DNA of 63,499 nt, counting the filler, from Bigelowiella natans CCMP2755 (lineage: Eukaryota > Protista > Cercozoa): the NCBI GenBank assembly GCA_000320545.1. It is 6 parts of 6 records of this genome, joined end to end, with 100 filler letters (N's around TTAATTAATTAA, not from the genome) between each part and the next. Parts side by side here need not be neighbours in the genome. Positions count along the whole stretch, not along the records: positions 39,811 to 63,499 come from ADNK01002597.1; 5 more parts are not named here. One strand, written 5' to 3'. Shown here one piece after another: positions 55,552 through 63,499 of the stretch (position 1 is its first letter; every line of letters begins with the position of its first letter). The position numbers were made by a program, and so were the translations under genes. The notes under the pieces are model-generated. The model had not been told where the DNA came from. It searched no databases and was given only the letters and a program-made list of their open reading frames with translations.

Positions 55552-56547
55552 TTATTCTTTTTCTACAAGAGCAATCTTTTCGTTCAGTGCAGCTATGTGT
55601 TCGGGAAATATTCCGCAACAACCACCAACGATTGTCGCACCGTCCTGAATCCAGTCCATGGCTACTTCAGCATAAGACTCCGGGCCGCAATCATTGTAGC
55701 TATCTTTGATTTGGGGCTCAATTGGCTTTACTTCTGTTGACTTACTACTGCTACTACCACTGCTACTGCTGCTGTCACCACCGCTGTTACTATCCATGCC
55801 ATTTGCATAACCCCCGACTTGAATGGACGGTGGAAGACATTCGCGAAGCTTTGGAATGACATTCGTGGTAGCCTCGATAGAAGAACAATTCACCAACACC
55901 GCTTCGACCCCATTAATATCCCGACATGCTTCTGCTGCTATGGAGATGTCCTCCCCCGATCTCAGGCTGCAGTCGGCTTCCTCAGAAAGCGTAAAAGATA
56001 CCCACACCGGAAGGCCCGTTTCCACTCCAGCGGATGCAGCGGCCGTACCCTCGCGCACGGAAGCCATTGTCTCACATAACAGCACGTCACAGTAAGGCGC
56101 TATGGCGGTGGCAATATCTTTATACTCCTGATAAAGTTCGTCATCTGAGTGCTTTGTGTCTACGCGGTAGGACGGTCCAAGGGGGGGGAGACATCCTGCC
56201 ACTTTTACGGTTCTGTCGGTGCTCTCTGCAGCTTCTCGAGCGATCCTTCCCGCCGCCGATATATACTCGATCATTTTTTCCCGTGTAAATATATCTCTGC
56301 TGCCCTCTTGGCCAGCGAGGGAGAGACAGTGAGGCACACAGGCATAGTTGTTGGTTGTAATGTACTCCGCTCCGGCTTCAATGTATGCAAGATGCGCCCT
56401 CTTCACGAGCTCAGGCCGTGATAGGTTGGCCAAAGCTACTCCTAGAAATCTCTCCGAGGAACCAAAAGGGCCCGATATGCGCATGCCAAGCCTCCTGAGC
56501 AGGTGGCCCATACCCCCATCGAGCAACAGCGTGTGACGAGCTGCCAT
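55552..56547 (-). CDS. Homocysteine S-methyltransferase family protein (HMT/BHMT/SMT), intronless
   Basis: 331-aa ORF with LLDGGMG, ITTNNY, VAGCLPPLGPSYR, LLCETMAS, PVWVSFTL, and Zn-ligand motifs VNCS and VGGCCG..PEHIAAL. Confidence 0.95.
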   Translation of the reverse strand: MAARHTLLLDGGMGHLLRRLGMRISGPFGSSERFLGVALANLSRPELVKRAHLAYIEAGAEYITTNNYACVPHCLSLAGQEGSRDIFTREKMIEYISAAGRIAREAAESTDRTVKVAGCLPPLGPSYRVDTKHSDDELYQEYKDIATAIAPYCDVLLCETMASVREGTAAASAGVETGLPVWVSFTLSEEADCSLRSGEDISIAAEACRDINGVEAVLVNCSSIEATTNVIPKLRECLPPSIQVGGYANGMDSNSGGDSSSSSGSSSSKSTEVKPIEPQIKDSYNDCGPESYAEVAMDWIQDGATIVGGCCGIFPEHIAALNEKIALVEKE

Positions 56548-57511
56548 TGTCTACTGGATCCAGAGACAACCTACGATGTCTCTCTGTTTTTGTTCAGCCA
56601 TACACAAAATAGAGGCCGTTTTGGTCTGAATTGACGTGAATTTCATTGCAGCACCTGGCTGAAACCCTTCTTGCACACAAAAGTGCTTCGACGACGGCAA
56701 ATGAGGTCTTCTTCATCTTGGTCTTGCATGGTCATGGTGCCTCTGCGAGCTGTGCTGTGTTATCTGTGTTCGTGCGAATTGTGAGAGAGTCGTTTCGGTC
56801 TACACCAGGTTGAGTCTGACAGGCAATTTCGCCTCTAAGTGTCCACGCACAACTTCGGCTAGTCGGGCTGAGCCGTTGCAGCGTGCAGCGTCTAGAGCGT
56901 GTGCACATGCAGTCGGCTGCAGCAGGGACCCAGGCCACGCAGTCGCTGGACTGACTGCACCTCTGCACACAAATGCAATTGGAAGTGTTCGCGGCTCAAC
57001 TGCCCCAGTCTAGCAGTGTGCCACACTCGCATCACAGTGAGCACTGGCCTGTTAGATTGTGCAGATTGGGGAGAAAAGTGACACCCACCAATTTCTCTCA
57101 TGCATTGCTTTGTCTTTGTGTAGCTGTCAAGTATATACAAGCAGCCTTTTTTTGCAACGTCTGCACAAAGGTGCGCGTGGCAACATGTTTGTGCCATAGT
57201 GCAACACATGCCATGTCTTTGTCATGTCGCCACATCTGGACGTGTCTAGTGCGTGCGTGGCTAGATGGCTGTGTCATGAATCCCGGTGTCATGTTGGTGG
57301 GATGCGGCTACGTCCTGTGCAAGATTTTAGACGCATACGAGCAGACGACTAGCACTGCTATTGCTGCATCCTTCATGCAGGGATCGTGCGTCTCGATGTT
57401 ACGTGTGACATTTGTTAGACAAGAAAGCTTTAAAACAATGCCCATCAAGGATTAAGGATTTAAGACCCTTTCCCTCCCATCCCCCAGCCGAGCTCGTTCT
57501 GCACGAGCCTG

Positions 57512-58832
57512 TTAATGTGCACGGCGGGGTTGGGACACGCTGTTTGTGGTCACTCTTGAGTGCAGCAGAGATCCTTTCATACTGCTGCCATTCTGTACAC
57601 CCTGCCGGTTGTTTACATACACAGCATCGCGGACAGCTGCCGCGCACGCTTCTATAGTGGACGTGAACGTCTCCTTGTCCTGCCCAGTGAGGCCATACTC
57701 AGAAGCAACGTTTTTGCCATTCTTCGAGGAGCTGGATGCAGGGGCGCCGAGGCGATTTCTATCACCATTGCTGCCGCTGCTGCGTAGGTTCCCAACACCG
57801 CTCCCAATATTAGTTTTCGCAGGCGTCATCGTCGCCTTTCTTTCGCCCTTGCTACTGTTATCAGCTCCGTCCTTCCCTTTCTTCTCAGGAGGATTGGGCT
57901 TCATTTTCACGAATCTCCCCCCGACGCGCGGCCGACGATCCGCAAAGCGCTTCCGGCAGGCGTAGCGAATGACCTGTTTCATGTTGAATTATTTACAGTT
58001 ACATAAGCATTTGCGCTGTGACTAAAGAGAAAGAAGAGAGAGCGCGCTATGCGGAGAAAACCGGAGGGGGGGGGGATTTCGAATTGAAATGTGTAAGGGA
58101 GCATAGGGAGCATAAGCACGTTGCTGCTTGCTTCGTAGAGGTGAAGGGCAATCACCAATTGTATGACCTTCCGAAACTTCCGGCTCTTTTTCTTTGCTAA
58201 ATATCTCCGGATTATCTGCGCCTTTTCTTCCTTGTTGTAAATGTGAATTTGGCCTGGCTGCAGATTCGACAACCCCGTATTGAAGCCATGCATGGCGTTT
58301 TGGTGCACAGGATGGGGGGGCAGCGCGGCGTGCCTTCTACGTGTCTCGATCTCTTGCAGCTGCTTGGGAGTTAACCGGTAGCTGCATAGAGAGGTAGGAA
58401 GAGAGGGGGGAGGGGGGGGGGGGGCACATAGAATTGATCAAACTCATGGACGGCGAAATACTTCAAAACGAGGAAAAACCGAACACTCTCCATGAAAGTT
58501 AGAACAGCATCGACGACTTTTGAGTTTCTGTTTGTAGGTCCTTAACGACGACGACGACGACGACCAAAGGGCGGTCGTCGCCGGACGTACGTCGTACGTC
58601 CCAAAAGTAGTCGATGAGGGTACTTTTGAAGGCCGTTTCGGCAGCCCGTCTGTGTGCAGACGTCTGCACTGCTCCGGTGCTGACATCGCTCGTTTATGCA
58701 GCGAAATCATACTCAAAGACGCTGCTCAGTTATGATGGGAAAGAAGAATTGTACCGGCTAGCAAGCGCTTGCGCTGCCGCTCTTTGCGCACTTGCGACTG
58801 CGGCAGCGAGATCTGTACTCTTTATCAAAGAC

Positions 58833-58863
<31 letters not shown>

Positions 58864-61666
58864 GCAAGTTCGGCCTGTCCTGGTGCTGCAACGACTTAGG
58901 TAGCTGCTTCTGATTTTGTGAGGTAGATGACGGGCGAAGACTCACGGGATATCGATTCCAGAACTGCTGACGCTGCTGCTGTTGCTGGAAGAGAAAGGCG
59001 AAGTGCTTCTCCCTCTGCTGCCGCTGCTGAGCCTGGTGAGCGAGTGTTGCTGCAGTAGTATTTGTAGTTGTTGTTGTTGTAGATGAGGATGATGGGGTCG
59101 TTGGTGTTGTTGTTGATGACGAGGCTAGCATACGGTTTGGGGTGGTGGTTGAGCTGGGGAGTGAGGAGACGGGAGAAAGATACCCGCTGCTGCTGCTGCT
59201 ACTCAGATTTTTGTCAGCCGTCGTGTTGATATTTGTGGTGGTGTTTGATCTCCTGGGGCTCATCATTGCTTGGCCTTGATTGCTGTAAAATTGCGGCTGG
59301 TGTTGCTTACTATTAACACTATTATTATTATCCGGTTGATGAAGCAGCTCAGATGAGGTTGCAAATGGGTCGAGGATGGATAAGTCAACTGATGGCTGTC
59401 GCGGTGTGCCGCCTAGTTTGTGATGAGGGGCAAGGGGGGCAAGGGGGGCAAGGGGAAGGGCAAGGGGGGCAAAATGATTAGACAAATGATTTATCTGATG
59501 TGTAAGCTGTGGAGGAGAAATAAGATCCCAAACACCCACTCACCCACACACACACACACACACACACAAATACGCTCTCTCTGAGAGGAGCAATCAGGGA
59601 CGAACGCATAGGTTTCATCAAAATGAAACCATGGCACACCGTCGTATCCTCCCTCTCCGCCCGCTACACCCAAGCTAGAGATCATGCATCAGCTCATGTA
59701 CCGTTACTTTGCTGTTGATGTGTAACGGCCCCGATGTGATTCTGCTGCTGGTGGTGGTGGTGGAGCTCCTGTCGCCTCTGTTGCACTCGCCTTTGCTGTT
59801 GTTGTTGTTCTTGCTGCTGCTGCTGGTTTATGTGCATTAAAGGCCTGGAGGTAGCGAGGGTCTGCTGAGGTGTTGATAATTCACTACCGTGTCTTTTCTT
59901 CAATGATGCACCTCCTCCTCTCCCATTGCTCACCCGTTGGCGTGCGGCAACATGAGGGGGCGGCGACGAAGACGACGAAGACGCCGCAGCAGCTATTTGA
60001 TTGATGGGGTTGTGGTGGAGGGAGGAGGAAGAGGGGGAGTCCTTGTCGAGGAATGATTCGGGGGCTCGAGCATCAGTGGGTATTCTGAATTGACGCCTCT
60101 GCCGTTGTTGCTGGAACGGCTTCTGCTGCTGTGGATTGTGGCCATGGGCGGAGGAGGTGCGGTTGTGGCGAAATGATGGGGAACTGTCAGTGCTGAGGCC
60201 GATGCTGTCCACGCGACGGCTGCCGGGCAGAATCTGAGGATTGGTCGTTGTGAAGTCCGCCAGCATGCTTGACACCGCTGATGGATGGGAATAACAATAA
60301 TTATATTGGGGAGGAGGGGAGGAGGGAGGAGGAGAGAAGAGGGGGTGAGGATTAAAAGAATGACAAAGGATGACGAAAATGTTCTGATGCTGTAAGGATT
60401 GAAAGATTGGCAAAGGAGGATAAATGTGTGATGATGCTGTAAGAACATTAGCCAGAAAAAAACCGAGCACGCGTGCACACCACCACCACCACCACCACCA
60501 CCACCACCACTTTCCTTCCCCCTCAACTGATTTCTGATACGATGTCTGTTACTTCTTCATTCGATCACACCGCCCCTGCTAACCCTTCTCCTCCTAGTTT
60601 CAGGTACCATCCGTAGATGACGAAGCCGAGGCCTCGAAAAGGGGGTGGTTTTGGTCTAGAATGGGGTCCACACTAAGATGTGACGCCTGTCTCATGATTC
60701 CACTGGCGCTATCTACTCTCAGCAGGTTGCTGTCTACGCGCTGAAAGCTATAGTCGAGACTCTCCGGCACGCTCGGAATTCGAGGCTGATTTTAAATTTG
60801 AGGTAGCAAATTAAGTTTAATAGCGAATAACCCGATGGGGGAGAGGGGGGGGAGTTAATTCGCTGTTGTAGTCGTTTGGACGAGAAAATAGAGGTCTTTC
60901 TTCTCCCCCCCTCCCTCCCTCCCTCCCTCCCTCCCTCCCTTTGTCTCCCACTCTCAAACATAGCTGCTAAACAATAGGTGTTATCATCATGATAGTAAGG
61001 GAGAACAACGACCATGCCGCTTGAGTCGAGGTTGTAATTCCCGAAAATCGAGAATCCGAGGTCCTCCCCCTCGAACGACAACAAGCTCTGGTATCTCCGA
61101 GGATTCTTCTTGTTCTTCAGCGGCCCTTTAACCTTTATTATATTGAGCACACCGATATGCACAGAGAAGAATGAGGACTACCGAGGCGTGGAAACGTGCA
61201 TAATGACATGAAAATTGTGCTGAGGATCATGCTGCGCGAGGGAGACAGTCGATTTTTCGAGGTCTCATATCCCTACACCCCTTTCCCATAACCCCCCCTT
61301 TTCTCACCAGCCATTGCGAGTAGTGTCGTTTCTTCGGAAACTCGGTTTGTTCAAACACTACACAGGAATGGCGAGGATCTGCAATGATCTTTGTAACCAG
61401 CGTCTCTACCAACTTCTTCGACCCCTCGAGAATCTGATCGATAATACCAGCAAGACCACCAGCTTATCATCGATGATCCAAAATAAAAGTCAATCCTGCT
61501 TTTCTAATAATAATAGAGCCTCCCCCCCCCCCCTCCCTCCCTTCGGGCGAGAAGTAAACCAATCCCTTGTGACAAATATGATTTTCTAATCTTTTAAAAA
61601 ATCCGCGCACCTGGCGGACACGGCGTGTCTCGAAGTCATACCATAGCGCTCCTAAATATACATATA

Positions 61667-61709
<43 letters not shown>

Positions 61710-62046
61710 GGGGGGGGGGGAGCGGGGTCGTGAAGAAGCAAACAGGTAACTCGATGTCCATTATTTTCAATGAAAACAAAAGACGCCGGCATCACACATC
61801 AAGCTCGATACTGAAGATGGTAGGGGATATTCTAGTACCGCCGATCATGAGTTTTCCATTTTTGGCTCTGGCATGCTCGATTATCCTCCAAACATCGACA
61901 CCAACGTTCAACTCTGTATTCATTAGATCATGAATATATTCGAAGTAAATTAAGATGCGGTTAAATTATCAGCTGTTGGACACTAGAGAGTCTTTAGCGC
62001 ATTATTTGGCGTAACTACCTGATCTGTAAGTCATGCGTATGAGACG
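57512..62046 (-). CDS. Putative BLUF - low-complexity linker - CCT domain protein (5' end unresolved; further exons likely upstream of 62046)
   Basis: BLUF exons (..62019, 61913-61839, 61651-61611, 61433-61308) splice in phase to RLIRMTYRSELNVGVDVWRIIEHARAKNGKLMIGGALWYDFETRRVRQILEGSKKLVETLVTKIIADPRHSCVVFEQTEFPKKRHYSQWL. CCT exons give EKAQIIRRYLAKKKSRKFRK|VIRYACRKRFADRRPRVGGRFVK. Each domain is high confidence; the fusion is moderate. Confidence 0.78.
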
Positions 62047-63499
62047 CTCTTCTTCTTTAGTCTCCCTTGAGAGAGGTCTATGATCGTAGTACCCCATGGT
62101 GTTAGCCCGTACATTTTCGCCGTCTATGGTTTTCTTCGTCACCACCGACACCCCGTCTGGACTCACATATTTCGGGCCGGTTCGGGCAAAGTCCTGCCGG
62201 GGGGGAGGGGGGAGAAGAAGGGTTTGAAACAGATTTCTGTTATCCTCTTTCTCTCCATTCGAGGTGTTTACAGAATGGAAAAACTGAAACGAAATCAGGC
62301 CGTCAGGGCGTTGCCACTTCCTCGTTGGATGTGAATGTATGAAAGAGTCCTCAGGAGTCTTTCGGACCAGCCACGAAGCATGCAACATGGCTGTTCTTAT
62401 TCGTATGGTTACCTGCAGATTGATGGCCGAACCGTCCATAACGCGCAGAAGCAGGGGCGGAAGATCGTTGAGAAGGGCGTAGAAGGTTGTAGAGAGGCGG
62501 ACGTTCAGTGGATTCCGTTGTCTGCAAGAAAGAGTGGCTCTGGGCCACTCAGACCTAGTTGACAGGAGAAGCTGTAGAAGACTCATTCAAAGCCTTAATT
62601 CGAGACATTCACATAATGTCCTCCTATAATTCTGCTCAGCGACAAGAAAGAAAGCGTAAAGCCAGCCAAAAACAGAGACATCAGGAAATATGAAAGTTTA
62701 TCCGAATGCTGCGGATTCGATCAATATAGCCTCCATTCCTCCGATCATCAGTTGTCGCACTTCAAAAAAACAGACCGTTCGGACCTTCCTTTGTGAGCCG
62801 AGAAACGGTGTCACCAAAGCAACTCGAACTTCATCAATACGGCTTCTTTTATTTTTGTTGCCGATCGCTGCTGGAAAGTGAGCTTTCCACTTTCCGAACA
62901 GCGATGTTCTTCCGATCAAAAATGACAAGCGTTTGTCATGAGATAGATGGCATTTTCGTGTTTTTTGGCTATTTTCTCTTTATCATTTTTCGCATCAAAA
63001 AAGGATCCTGTTCATCGGTATTTGTGGGCTCGGCCGTGCAACTTCGCTAAGATTCGGCCACCGCCCCAGGATTCCATGATTTTTTCAAAAACAATGTAGG
63101 ATTTAGGATTGCGACAACCAATAATGAATGTCTTCGACATTAAATCATAGGAATTCCTTCTCCACGCGCCTGCAAGCGTAATGGCGGCCCCTACCCCCTT
63201 GCCATTCGGAAGGAGGAGGGGGGCAAAGACTAATCGCACCATCGCAGCTTGGACGATTTTATTCTGCATTATATGCGTCGATTCATCGCGTTTGGTACAG
63301 GTAATACAACACGTTAATCCCCCCTCGTGAAACAGGGGACGGGCTTTTTTAGCAAATAGAAGACGAGTCGTATTTCTCCGTTAATTCAGCCAATTATAGA
63401 ATCATTCACCATCATTGCTTCGGTACAAATGACGGTGCGCCCCCCCATCCCGTCGCTACGAGCGTTTCTCCCGGTTTTCAGGGTACTTGAGCTGATACT

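What the first reader, a model, noticed from the sequence alone, without database searches (positions are those of the whole stretch)
57512..62046. BLUF blue-light sensor apparently fused to a CCT (CONSTANS/TOC1/PRR) domain: candidate single-protein light-to-transcription switch
Seen: four minus-strand exons that the ORF track does not show as a domain splice with matching phases into a full BLUF domain. It retains the photochemically essential Tyr (TAC 62026-62028) and Gln (RQILEG), the flavin-binding Asn (ARAKN), DPRH and the Trp. Downstream on the same strand and contig, in-phase exons continue (VKGPLK.. | PRIPSVPE.. | AVSSMLADF.. Gln/Ser/His-rich .. | RLHTDG.. | TYKQKLK.. | YRLTPKQ..) into a canonical CCT motif. 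I could not fix one junction uniquely (about 59700-59500), but I saw no intergenic-type gap. Established: BLUF domains are FAD photoswitches usually coupled to cyclases or EAL domains, or standing alone; CCT domains bind DNA with NF-YB/YC in plant clock and photoperiod regulators. Inference: this is a directly light-gated clock/photoperiod factor, analogous to aureochrome (bZIP-LOV) but built from different parts. I know of no described BLUF-CCT protein.
Basis: partly seen in the sequence, partly recalled or inferred. Interest (0 to 1): 0.93.

Follow-up and report, generated by a model that had tools for sequence, protein, structure and literature searches.

The report
BLUF–CCT blue-light sensor fusion gene
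An 11-exon nuclear gene of the alga Bigelowiella natans encodes one protein with a flavin blue-light sensor (BLUF) at one end and a plant-type clock/photoperiod DNA-binding motif (CCT) at the other; the combination is conserved in two relatives, was not found in the papers searched, and is a candidate one-protein light-to-gene switch.

Summary
Transcript contigs from three independent runs give ten GT-AG introns on the minus strand. Joined, the exons form a single 932-codon frame from 62586 to the stop at 57514-57512. The likely start is ATG 62439, giving 883 aa.

Pfam finds BLUF in the exon at 61433-61308 and a CCT motif split over exons 58381-58168 and 57973-57515. A 41-nt microexon (61651-61611) supplies the photoactive Gln.

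The organism is Bigelowiella natans. Its public gene model (JGI 142655, 486 aa) skips the microexon and stops before the CCT.

Only two relatives turned up, both with BLUF and CCT above Pfam thresholds. One is an Amorphochlora amoebiformis "hypothetical protein". The other is a single uninterrupted 1.7-kb transcript contig.

Tyr, Asn, Gln and Trp of BLUF are kept; the usual β5 Met is not.

No paper in the library pairs BLUF with a CCT domain. Photochemistry and DNA binding remain inferred.

The parts
62413..62535 (-). Exon 1 (5' exon). Transcript contigs reach at least 62535. The likely start codon is ATG 62439-62437. The upstream in-frame ATG at 62586, used by the JGI model, is not covered by the contigs.
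   Evidence: joint 62192>62412, with X2 record 13 extending 123 nt beyond it; no other ATG between 62535 and 62439; orthologue N-termini align with this Met, and residue numbers then match P0002 exactly.
62019..62193 (-). Exon 2: N-terminal lead (…NTMGYYDHRP…) and BLUF strand β1, with the photoactive Tyr (TAC 62028-62026, LIRMTYRS).
   Evidence: for the joints, for GT-AG, for tblastn collinearity with P0002 and P0003, for the alignment to AppA Tyr21.
61839..61913 (-). Exon 3: BLUF helix α1, with the flavin-contacting Asn (AAT 61860-61858, HARAKN).
   Evidence: joint 61913>62019. The lower boundary comes from contig-length arithmetic: 362 nt = 120+126+41+75. Supported by a GT donor and by orthologues.
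61611..61651 (-). Exon 4: 41-nt microexon encoding (G)ALWYDFETRRVRQ, which is BLUF β2-β3 and ends in the photoactive Gln (CAG 61613-61611).
   Evidence: joint 61433>61611, side 40. AG acceptor and GT donor; 87% identical to both orthologues; a separate exon in Amorphochlora too. The public model P0001 skips it.
61308..61433 (-). Exon 5: BLUF C-terminal half (ILEG…DPRH…HYSQWL), with Trp TGG 61313-61311.
   Evidence: PF04940 at 33.3 bits; only 3 hits among 1.84 billion representative proteins; weak matches to BlrP1 and PAC.
61013..61132 (-). Exon 6. Its first codon (Val) sits where BLUF proteins usually have the β5 Met. It then carries a conserved post-BLUF motif, NPRRYQSLLSFEGEDLGFSIFGNYNLDSSGM, of unknown role.
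   Evidence: 81% identical to P0002; no Pfam family.
60608..60785 (-). Exon 7: conserved PRIPSVPESLDY, then the start of the divergent linker.
59702..60277 (-). Exon 8: Gln/Ser/His-rich low-complexity linker.
   Evidence: joints 60277>60608 and 59411>59701 in three runs; linker is 480 aa, 15% Ser and 15% Gln.
58755..59412 (-). It holds a (CAA)n run at 58826-58872, where the short-read contigs break.
   Evidence: contigs cover 58873-59411 and 58755-58784; the frame is open right across the gap (ORF 59539..58733).
58168..58381 (-). Exon 10: conserved ALPPHPVH and IHIYNKEEK, then the first half of the CCT motif (AQIIRRYLAKKKSRKFRK).
   Evidence: PF06203 profile 2-21; joints 58381>58755 and 57968>58163; 61% identical to P0002.
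57376..57973 (-). Exon 11: second half of CCT (VIRYACRKRFADRRPRVGGRFVK), a basic tail, a conserved C-terminal IEACAAAVRDAVY motif, the stop at 57514-57512, the 3' UTR, and a poly(A) site near 57376.
   Evidence: PF06203 at 35.6 bits, profile 19-43; a loose end of 24 T before 57376 in X1, and raw RNA reads of X21 over 57300-57896..
58382..58754 (-). Intron 9. It is retained in a minority of contigs, which would end the frame after …ASRYNSSFPS and give a BLUF-only product without CCT.
   Evidence: contigs 58405-58784 at depths 38.8 vs 335.6 (X1), 9.0 vs 27.4 (X2) and 48.8 vs 641.8 (X10); stop in frame.

Best explanation
Shown: this is one nuclear gene of Bigelowiella natans with 11 exons on the minus strand. 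It encodes a protein of about 883 aa in four parts: an N-terminal BLUF domain; a conserved ~45-aa post-BLUF motif; a ~480-aa Gln/Ser/Thr-rich, presumably disordered, linker; and a C-terminal CCT motif plus a short conserved C-terminal motif (helical in the low-confidence model).

Inferred mechanism: the BLUF domain binds FAD non-covalently. Blue light rearranges the Tyr65-Gln106-flavin hydrogen-bond network. That change in the β-sheet and the post-BLUF extension alters self-association or partner binding. The CCT motif, as in CONSTANS, Hd1 and TOC1, joins an NF-YB/NF-YC histone-fold dimer and contacts DNA. Promoter occupancy, and so transcription, would then be light-dependent.

The layout, an N-terminal regulatory module, a disordered middle and a C-terminal CCT, is that of CONSTANS-like (B-box) and PRR (pseudo-receiver) proteins. 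Here a photoreceptor domain takes the N-terminal place. With so long a floppy linker, I expect light-controlled oligomerisation or partner exchange rather than rigid allostery.
For: One gene, one frame. Ten GT..AG introns are seen as joints in contigs of three runs from three studies. The joined exons give one 932-codon frame.

Contig continuity. 1960-1988-nt contigs run from exon 9 to exon 1. 541-866-nt contigs run from the poly(A) end through exons 11 and 10 into exon 9. Depths either side of the only gap, an 88-nt stretch containing the CAA repeat, are equal in X1 (335.6 vs 348.4) and X2 (27.4 vs 23.5).

Domains. PF04940 and PF06203 hit the exons.

Orthologues. P0002 scores BLUF 60.9 and CCT 52.0 bits; P0003 scores 51.6 and 50.8 bits. 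P0002 is a continuous ORF on single transcript contigs from two runs, with an in-frame stop upstream. Both orthologues are collinear with the window's exons. The microexon and the KF(R/Q)K|V(I/V)RY intron inside CCT are shared with the Amorphochlora gene.

Residues. The alignment to AppA keeps Tyr21, Asn45, Gln63 and Trp104. The CCT is close to the Hd1 and CO CCT solved with NF-Y (7c9o, 7cvo; E 1.6e-8 to 6e-8).

Fold. Although the model is of low confidence, every listed Foldseek PDB match (ranks 1-49) is a BLUF structure, and the secondary-structure order is β-α-β-β-α-β-β.
Against: No experiment shows flavin binding, a photocycle, nuclear localisation, or NF-Y or DNA binding.

The β5 Met (AppA Met106) is Val, Thr or Ala in the three species. 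From my own knowledge, this Met is needed for signal relay in PixD and AppA.

The AlphaFold models are poor: pLDDT 36.7 and 46.3.

No single contig spans the CAA repeat at 58785-58872. In run X10 the 3' part is about 10-fold deeper than the 5' part. I read that as 3' bias, because depth falls stepwise towards the 5' end.

The 480-aa linker makes direct allosteric coupling unlikely.
Confidence: 0.6

Rival explanations
1. The protein is an ordinary CCT-type nuclear regulator. Its BLUF-like domain no longer senses light and serves as a dimerisation, redox-sensing or partner-binding module.
For: The β5 Met is absent in all three species. The BLUF is divergent: its half-domain found nothing outside the family in 1.84 billion proteins, and the best PDB match is only about 30% identical. 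There is no evidence of flavin binding.
Against: Tyr, Asn, Gln, Trp and the DxRH motif are kept. The BLUF half-domain is 66-71% identical between species whose linkers have diverged beyond alignment, which suggests selection on the photoactive core. From my own knowledge, Met mutants of PixD keep the red shift, so loss of the Met does not remove photochemistry.
Confidence: 0.2
2. It is a true blue-light receptor, but the output is not DNA binding. The CCT acts only as a nuclear-localisation or protein-docking motif, for example for light-controlled nuclear import or sequestering of NF-Y subunits.
For: From my own knowledge, part of the CCT acts as a nuclear-localisation signal in plants, and many CCT proteins act through protein contacts. 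The long disordered linker suits a scaffold.
Against: The CCT matches the whole motif, including the RPRxxGRF segment present in the CO/Hd1-NF-Y-DNA structures. Both halves are invariant or nearly so in three species.
Confidence: 0.12
3. The main products are separate: a BLUF-only protein and a CCT-only transcript. The full-length fusion is then a minor or artefactual read-through.
For: No contig crosses 58785-58872. Run X10 shows about 10-fold more depth on the 3' contigs. Contigs that retain intron 9 (8-33% of depth) would encode a BLUF protein without CCT.
Against: Depth is equal on both sides of the gap in X1 and X2. The gap lies in a CAA run longer than the assembler's 31-letter word, inside an open frame. 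The spliced contig carries 30 nt of exon 9 joined to exon 10. The frame is kept over all ten junctions. The orthologue P0002 has both domains on one contig.
Confidence: 0.05

Closest known systems
Aureochromes (bZIP-LOV) of stramenopile algae
   Same: A flavin blue-light sensor and a DNA-binding motif in one algal polypeptide. The expected logic is the same: light to transcription without a signalling cascade.
   Different: Aureochromes use a LOV sensor with FMN and a cysteinyl adduct, a bZIP effector placed N-terminal to the sensor, and a short linker. Here the sensor is BLUF (FAD, hydrogen-bond switch) at the N-terminus, the effector is CCT, and a ~480-aa linker separates them. Pfam finds neither LOV/PAS nor bZIP.
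CONSTANS/CO-like, Hd1 and PRR/TOC1 proteins (plant CCT regulators)
   Same: A C-terminal CCT motif matching the Hd1 and CO CCT solved with NF-Y (7c9o with Hd1; 7cvo and 7cvq as NF-YC-CO chimeras). The layout is also the same: N-terminal regulatory domain, disordered middle, CCT.
   Different: There is no B-box and no pseudo-receiver. The N-terminal module is a photoreceptor domain. The host is a rhizarian alga, not a plant.
AppA (BLUF-SCHIC) of Rhodobacter sphaeroides
   Same: It is the best solved BLUF match (2iyg, E 6e-8). AppA also controls transcription, through light-dependent binding of the repressor PpsR.
   Different: AppA is bacterial and has no DNA-binding motif of its own. AppA has Met106; these proteins have Val, Thr or Ala there.
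Photoactivated adenylyl cyclases (Euglena PAC, bPAC, OaPAC) and BlrP1 (BLUF-EAL)
   Same: A BLUF sensor fused to an effector. PAC is the classical eukaryotic BLUF protein. The folds match.
   Different: Their effector is an enzyme attached by a short rigid linker. Here the effector is a short DNA/NF-Y-binding motif far from the sensor.
JGI Bigna1 model 142655 (EukProt EP00466_P003277), the public model of this locus
   Same: Same gene, and the same exons 1-3 and 5-8.
   Different: It is 486 aa. It skips the microexon, so the BLUF reads …LMIGAGGLAGIIDQILEG…. It reads through the donor at 59702 into a stop, so it has no CCT.

Membership tests
BLUF (Pfam PF04940) | Profile match above the curated cut-off (25 bits) | tested here: met
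   The window exon 61433-61308 alone scores 33.3 bits. P0001 scores 38.4, P0002 60.9 and P0003 51.6 bits.
BLUF (Pfam PF04940) | Photoactive Tyr (β1) and Gln (β3), and the flavin-contacting Asn (α1) | tested here: met
   P0002 aligns to AppA 2iyg with Tyr21/Tyr65, Asn45/Asn86 and Gln63/Gln106. The same residues are in the window at 62028-62026, 61860-61858 and 61613-61611.
BLUF (Pfam PF04940) | β5 Trp and Met (AppA Trp104, Met106) | tested here: not met
   The Trp is kept (61313-61311). The Met position is Val (B. natans), Thr (P0002) or Ala (P0003). This is a semi-conserved signalling residue, not part of the Pfam criterion.
BLUF (Pfam PF04940) | Ferredoxin-like β-α-β-β-α-β-β fold | tested here: inconclusive
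   The AF2 model has low confidence (pLDDT 46.3, pTM 0.44). Its element order is right, and every listed Foldseek PDB match is BLUF, best E 2.8e-3.
BLUF (Pfam PF04940) | Non-covalent FAD binding and a reversible ~10-nm red shift in blue light | not testable with these tools
   Needs the purified protein and spectroscopy.
CCT motif (Pfam PF06203) | Profile match above the curated cut-off (28.4 bits) | tested here: met
   Window exon 11 alone scores 35.6 bits (profile 19-43), and exon 10 covers profile 2-21. P0002 scores 52.0 and P0003 50.8 bits.
CCT motif (Pfam PF06203) | Conserved RY…K…RKF.K.IRY..RK..A..RPR..GRF core, as in the CO and Hd1 structures | tested here: met
   Alignments to 7c9o (Hd1) and 7cvo/7cvq (CO) at E 1.6e-8 to 6e-8. 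The window reads RRYLAKKKSRKFRK|VIRYACRKRFADRRPRVGGRFVK.
CCT motif (Pfam PF06203) | Binding to NF-YB/NF-YC and to DNA | not testable with these tools
   No eukaryotic NF-Y reference could be given to the complex tool. Needs EMSA or pull-down.
CONSTANS-like (COL) | N-terminal B-box zinc finger(s) | tested here: not met
   No B-box hit in any exon or orthologue.
Pseudo-response regulators (PRR/TOC1) | N-terminal (pseudo-)receiver domain | tested here: not met
   No Response_reg hit.
Aureochrome | bZIP plus a LOV (PAS) domain | tested here: not met
   Neither domain was found. The resemblance is functional analogy only.

The most novel reading that the evidence does not exclude
Chlorarachniophyte algae have a so-far lineage-restricted single-chain photoreceptor-transcription factor. 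A BLUF flavin sensor directly controls a CCT/NF-Y-type DNA-binding module. It would be the first BLUF protein with a DNA-binding output in eukaryotes and the first CCT regulator that is itself a photoreceptor. It may have been assembled from a bacterial-type BLUF and a CCT gene inherited from the green-algal endosymbiont, and it signals without the canonical β5 Met.
Probability: 0.5. Interest if true: 0.85.

Novelty: new variant of a known kind. Interest (0 to 1): 0.8.

Why it matters
In plants, CCT proteins (CO, PRRs/TOC1) receive light information indirectly, through separate photoreceptors and regulated protein stability. A CCT protein that carries its own flavin sensor would short-circuit that pathway. 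It would give a simple system for asking how light reaches the NF-Y/CCT machinery.

It would also extend BLUF outputs beyond cyclases, EAL domains and partner-sequestering. It would add a second, independently evolved "flavin sensor plus DNA-binding motif" design beside aureochromes, and it could yield a new optogenetic part.

It also shows that the public B. natans gene model hides the architecture. The model misses a 41-nt microexon and truncates before the CCT. Domain-co-occurrence surveys based on that annotation would therefore miss the fusion.

Tried and rejected
The joined spliced protein was only translated inside scripts, to check the frame and locate motifs. It was not sent to any search, fold or family tool. 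Searches used single exons by reference, or the database proteins P0001-P0003. The joined-model Pfam scan and fold were left out.

- AlphaFold of P0002 with a 2-row alignment gave pLDDT 36.7, which is unusable. The BLUF region with 7 rows gave pLDDT 46.3, usable only for element order and a weak Foldseek check.
- Aligning exon fragments with the full orthologues misplaced several fragments (A2), so I did not use that alignment. tblastn and A4 were used instead.
- Three word-index searches found only the same three proteins: whole P0002, the profile of P0002+P0003, and the BLUF region. Two of them scored only the 8000 candidates sharing most words, so absence elsewhere is not shown.
- The ESM Atlas gave nothing for the whole protein, and only bacterial short BLUF clusters (scores ≤0.86, leads only) for the BLUF part.
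- The JGI metagenome scan found no relative.
- The phmmer search of 1.84 billion representatives used only a 42-aa exon, so distant BLUF-CCT proteins could be missed.
- The sigma-70 promoter and terminator scan is irrelevant to a eukaryote and found nothing.
- Supplements of the B. natans diurnal RNA-seq paper are not held, so diel expression could not be read.
- The Amorphochlora genome paper and the open-ocean photoreceptor survey mention neither BLUF nor CCT.
- The joint 59081>59742 (GA..TT, low depth) and the loose ends at 59065-59763 lie in CAG/CAA repeats. I take them as assembly cross-talk.
Full report
**What is there**

The piece is eukaryotic nuclear DNA. On the minus strand between about 62535 and 57376 lies a gene of 11 exons.

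I laid contigs of three runs from three studies (X1, X2, X10) and raw RNA reads of a fourth (X21) on 57101-63050. The contigs carry ten joints. All have CT..AC ends on the plus strand, which is GT..AG on the minus strand, so they are spliced transcripts of the minus strand.

After small shifts allowed by ambiguous bases, every intron is GT..AG. The introns are:
- 62194-62412
- 61914-62018
- 61652-61838
- 61434-61610
- 61133-61307
- 60786-61012
- 60278-60607
- 59413-59701
- 58382-58754
- 57974-58167

The joint 61651|61839 was not listed. It follows from arithmetic. In two contigs (X10 record 10 and X2 record 13), exactly 362 nt lie between the pieces that end at 60785 and start at 62019. Exons of 120, 126, 41 and 75 nt add up to 362. 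Both splice sites are canonical.

A run of 24 T before 57376 marks the poly(A) site. The few raw RNA reads (13) all lie in the last 600 nt.

**One frame**

Translating the joined exons in a script gives a single open frame of 932 codons, from ATG 62586 to the stop at 57514-57512. No other frame exceeds 110 codons.

The contigs reach only 62535, and the next ATG downstream is 62439. The orthologues start at the aligned position. With that start, the residue numbers of Tyr65, Asn86, Gln106 and Trp147 are identical to those of P0002. I therefore take ATG 62439 as the likely start, giving 883 aa.

The joined protein was not sent to any search tool.

**Domains**

Scanned exon by exon, Pfam gives:
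- BLUF (PF04940): 33.3 bits against a cut-off of 25, for 61433-61308.
- CCT (PF06203): split across 58381-58168 (profile 2-21) and 57973-57515 (profile 19-43; 35.6 bits against 28.4).

- LIRMTYRS (Tyr, 62028-62026)
- …HARAKNGKLMIG (Asn, 61860-61858)
- a 41-nt microexon, (G)ALWYDFETRRVRQ, ending in the Gln (61613-61611)
- ILEG…DPRH…HYSQWL (Trp, 61313-61311)

**Whose gene it is, and the public model**

A phmmer search of 1.84 billion representative proteins with the 42-aa BLUF exon found only three proteins.

P0001 is 100% identical. It is EukProt EP00466_Bigelowiella_natans_P003277, which is JGI Bigna1 142655. So the organism is the chlorarachniophyte Bigelowiella natans. That 486-aa model skips the microexon. 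It also reads through the donor at 59702 into a stop, so it has BLUF but no CCT. The RNA evidence corrects both errors.

**Orthologues**

P0003 (534 aa) is an Amorphochlora amoebiformis "hypothetical protein" (GAB5364019.1).

P0002 (450 aa) is encoded as one uninterrupted ORF on single transcript contigs of 1728 and 1679 nt from two runs of an unidentified sample, with an in-frame stop upstream.

Both score above the Pfam cut-offs for BLUF (60.9 and 51.6 bits) and for CCT (52.0 and 50.8 bits), and for nothing else.

By tblastn they map collinearly onto the window's exons:
- the N-terminal lead and β1
- α1
- the microexon (87% identity)
- the BLUF C-half (64-68%)
- a post-BLUF motif, LLSFEGEDLGFSIFGNYNLD.SGM|PRIPS.P (81%)
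- nothing alignable across the linker
- ALPPHP.H…IHIYNKEEK and the whole CCT
- a C-terminal motif, CAAAV..AV

In the Amorphochlora genome the microexon is also a separate exon, and the intron inside the CCT (KFQK|VVRY) is at the same place.

The B. natans protein differs mainly by a 480-aa Ser/Gln/Thr-rich linker, where the others have roughly 120-170 aa.

**Is it one mRNA?**

Contigs of 1960-1988 nt run from exon 9 (58873) to exon 1. Contigs of 541-866 nt run from the poly(A) end through exons 11 and 10 and 30 nt into exon 9.

The 30-nt limit is what a 31-letter-word assembler gives where spliced and intron-retaining paths merge. The remaining gap, 58785-58872, contains a (CAA)n run longer than the word size. 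The gap lies in an open frame.

Depths on the two sides agree in X1 (335.6 vs 348.4) and X2 (27.4 vs 23.5). In X10 the 3' side is about 10 times deeper, and depth falls stepwise towards the 5' end, which suggests 3' bias.

With frame conservation over ten junctions and an orthologue on a single contig, I put the fusion at about 0.95. A long read has still to show it directly.

**Comparison with known structures**

P0002's CCT aligns to the Hd1 and CONSTANS CCT solved with NF-Y subunits (7c9o, 7cvo, 7cvq; E 1.6e-8 to 6e-8). Its BLUF aligns to AppA (2iyg, E 6e-8). AppA's Tyr21, Asn45, Gln63 and Trp104 are matched.

AppA Met106 is not matched. That position is Thr, Ala or Val in the three species.

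The structure models are poor because the alignment has only two or three species. Even so, the BLUF part has the β-α-β-β-α-β-β order, and every listed Foldseek PDB match (ranks 1-49) is a BLUF domain.

**Mechanism: what is shown and what is inferred**

Shown: the architecture, its transcription, its conservation, and retention of the photochemical triad and of the CCT core.

Inferred from established knowledge of BLUF and CCT proteins:
- FAD binding
- a light-driven hydrogen-bond switch around Tyr65 and Gln106
- transmission through the β-sheet and the conserved post-BLUF motif
- CCT docking on NF-YB/YC and DNA

The linker is long and of low complexity. I therefore favour light-dependent self-association or partner exchange. 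This parallels the way B-boxes multimerise CO, or the way AppA and PixD trade partners. Rigid allostery seems unlikely.

Contigs that retain intron 9, at 8-33% of depth, would give a BLUF-only protein. That isoform could modulate the full-length form.

**Novelty**

No paper in the library pairs BLUF with a CCT domain, uses the term "BLUF-CCT", or discusses BLUF in chlorarachniophytes beyond incidental co-mention. A 2025 review of algal photoreceptors lists BLUF outputs only generically. The Amorphochlora genome paper and an open-ocean photoreceptor survey mention neither domain.

Database searches found no member outside these three. Their limits are stated under Tried and rejected.

I rate it a new variant of a known kind: a flavin photoreceptor fused to a transcription-factor motif, built from parts not previously seen together.

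**Other points**

Noticed in passing
window 61611-61651 and 59697-59702 (compare P0001): The public gene model of this locus (JGI Bigna1 142655 / EukProt P003277, 486 aa) is wrong in two places. It skips the 41-nt microexon, putting intron-derived residues AGGLAGIID in the BLUF core. It also reads through the donor at 59702 into a stop, losing 446 residues including the CCT.
   Followed up: yes
window 58382-58754: Intron 9 is retained in contigs at about 8-33% of the depth of the spliced form in three runs. The retained form stops after …ASRYNSSFPS and would give a BLUF protein without CCT. This could be a regulated isoform or just unspliced RNA.
   Followed up: partly
window 61013-61132 and 60741-60785; P0002 residues 158-199: A motif downstream of BLUF, LLSFEGEDLGFSIFGNYNLD.SGMPRIPS.P, is nearly invariant in three species and has no Pfam family. 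It could be the BLUF output helix or cap, or a docking site.
   Followed up: partly
window 57590-57640; P0002 residues 430-441: A C-terminal motif, I(E/A)ACAAAV..AV(Y/L), is predicted helical and has unknown function.
   Followed up: no
window 61132-61130 (Val); P0002 Thr149; P0003 Ala: The position of the near-universal β5 Met of BLUF domains is variable and never Met in this family. This implies an unusual signal relay, or none.
   Followed up: partly
window 55552-56547, minus strand: The downstream neighbour is an intron-free 331-aa homocysteine S-methyltransferase gene (PF02574, E 7e-55).
   Followed up: partly
window 40761-42470, plus strand: A 569-aa single-exon ORF has a charged, probably coiled-coil N-terminal half and highly similar tandem Kelch repeats (Kelch_1, E 1.4e-33).
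   Followed up: partly
L003 6001-14472 (Amorphochlora amoebiformis BAAHQB010000110.1): The orthologous gene spans 8.5 kb with at least 14 small exons, against 11 in B. natans. This fits the intron-rich genome reported for that species. At least two intron positions are shared.
   Followed up: partly
window 61680-61725, 59545-59580, 60905-60950, 58826-58872: There are (CA)n and (GGGA)n microsatellites in introns and a (CAA)n run in the coding linker. The repeats break short-read transcript contigs and attract chimeric loose ends.
   Followed up: no
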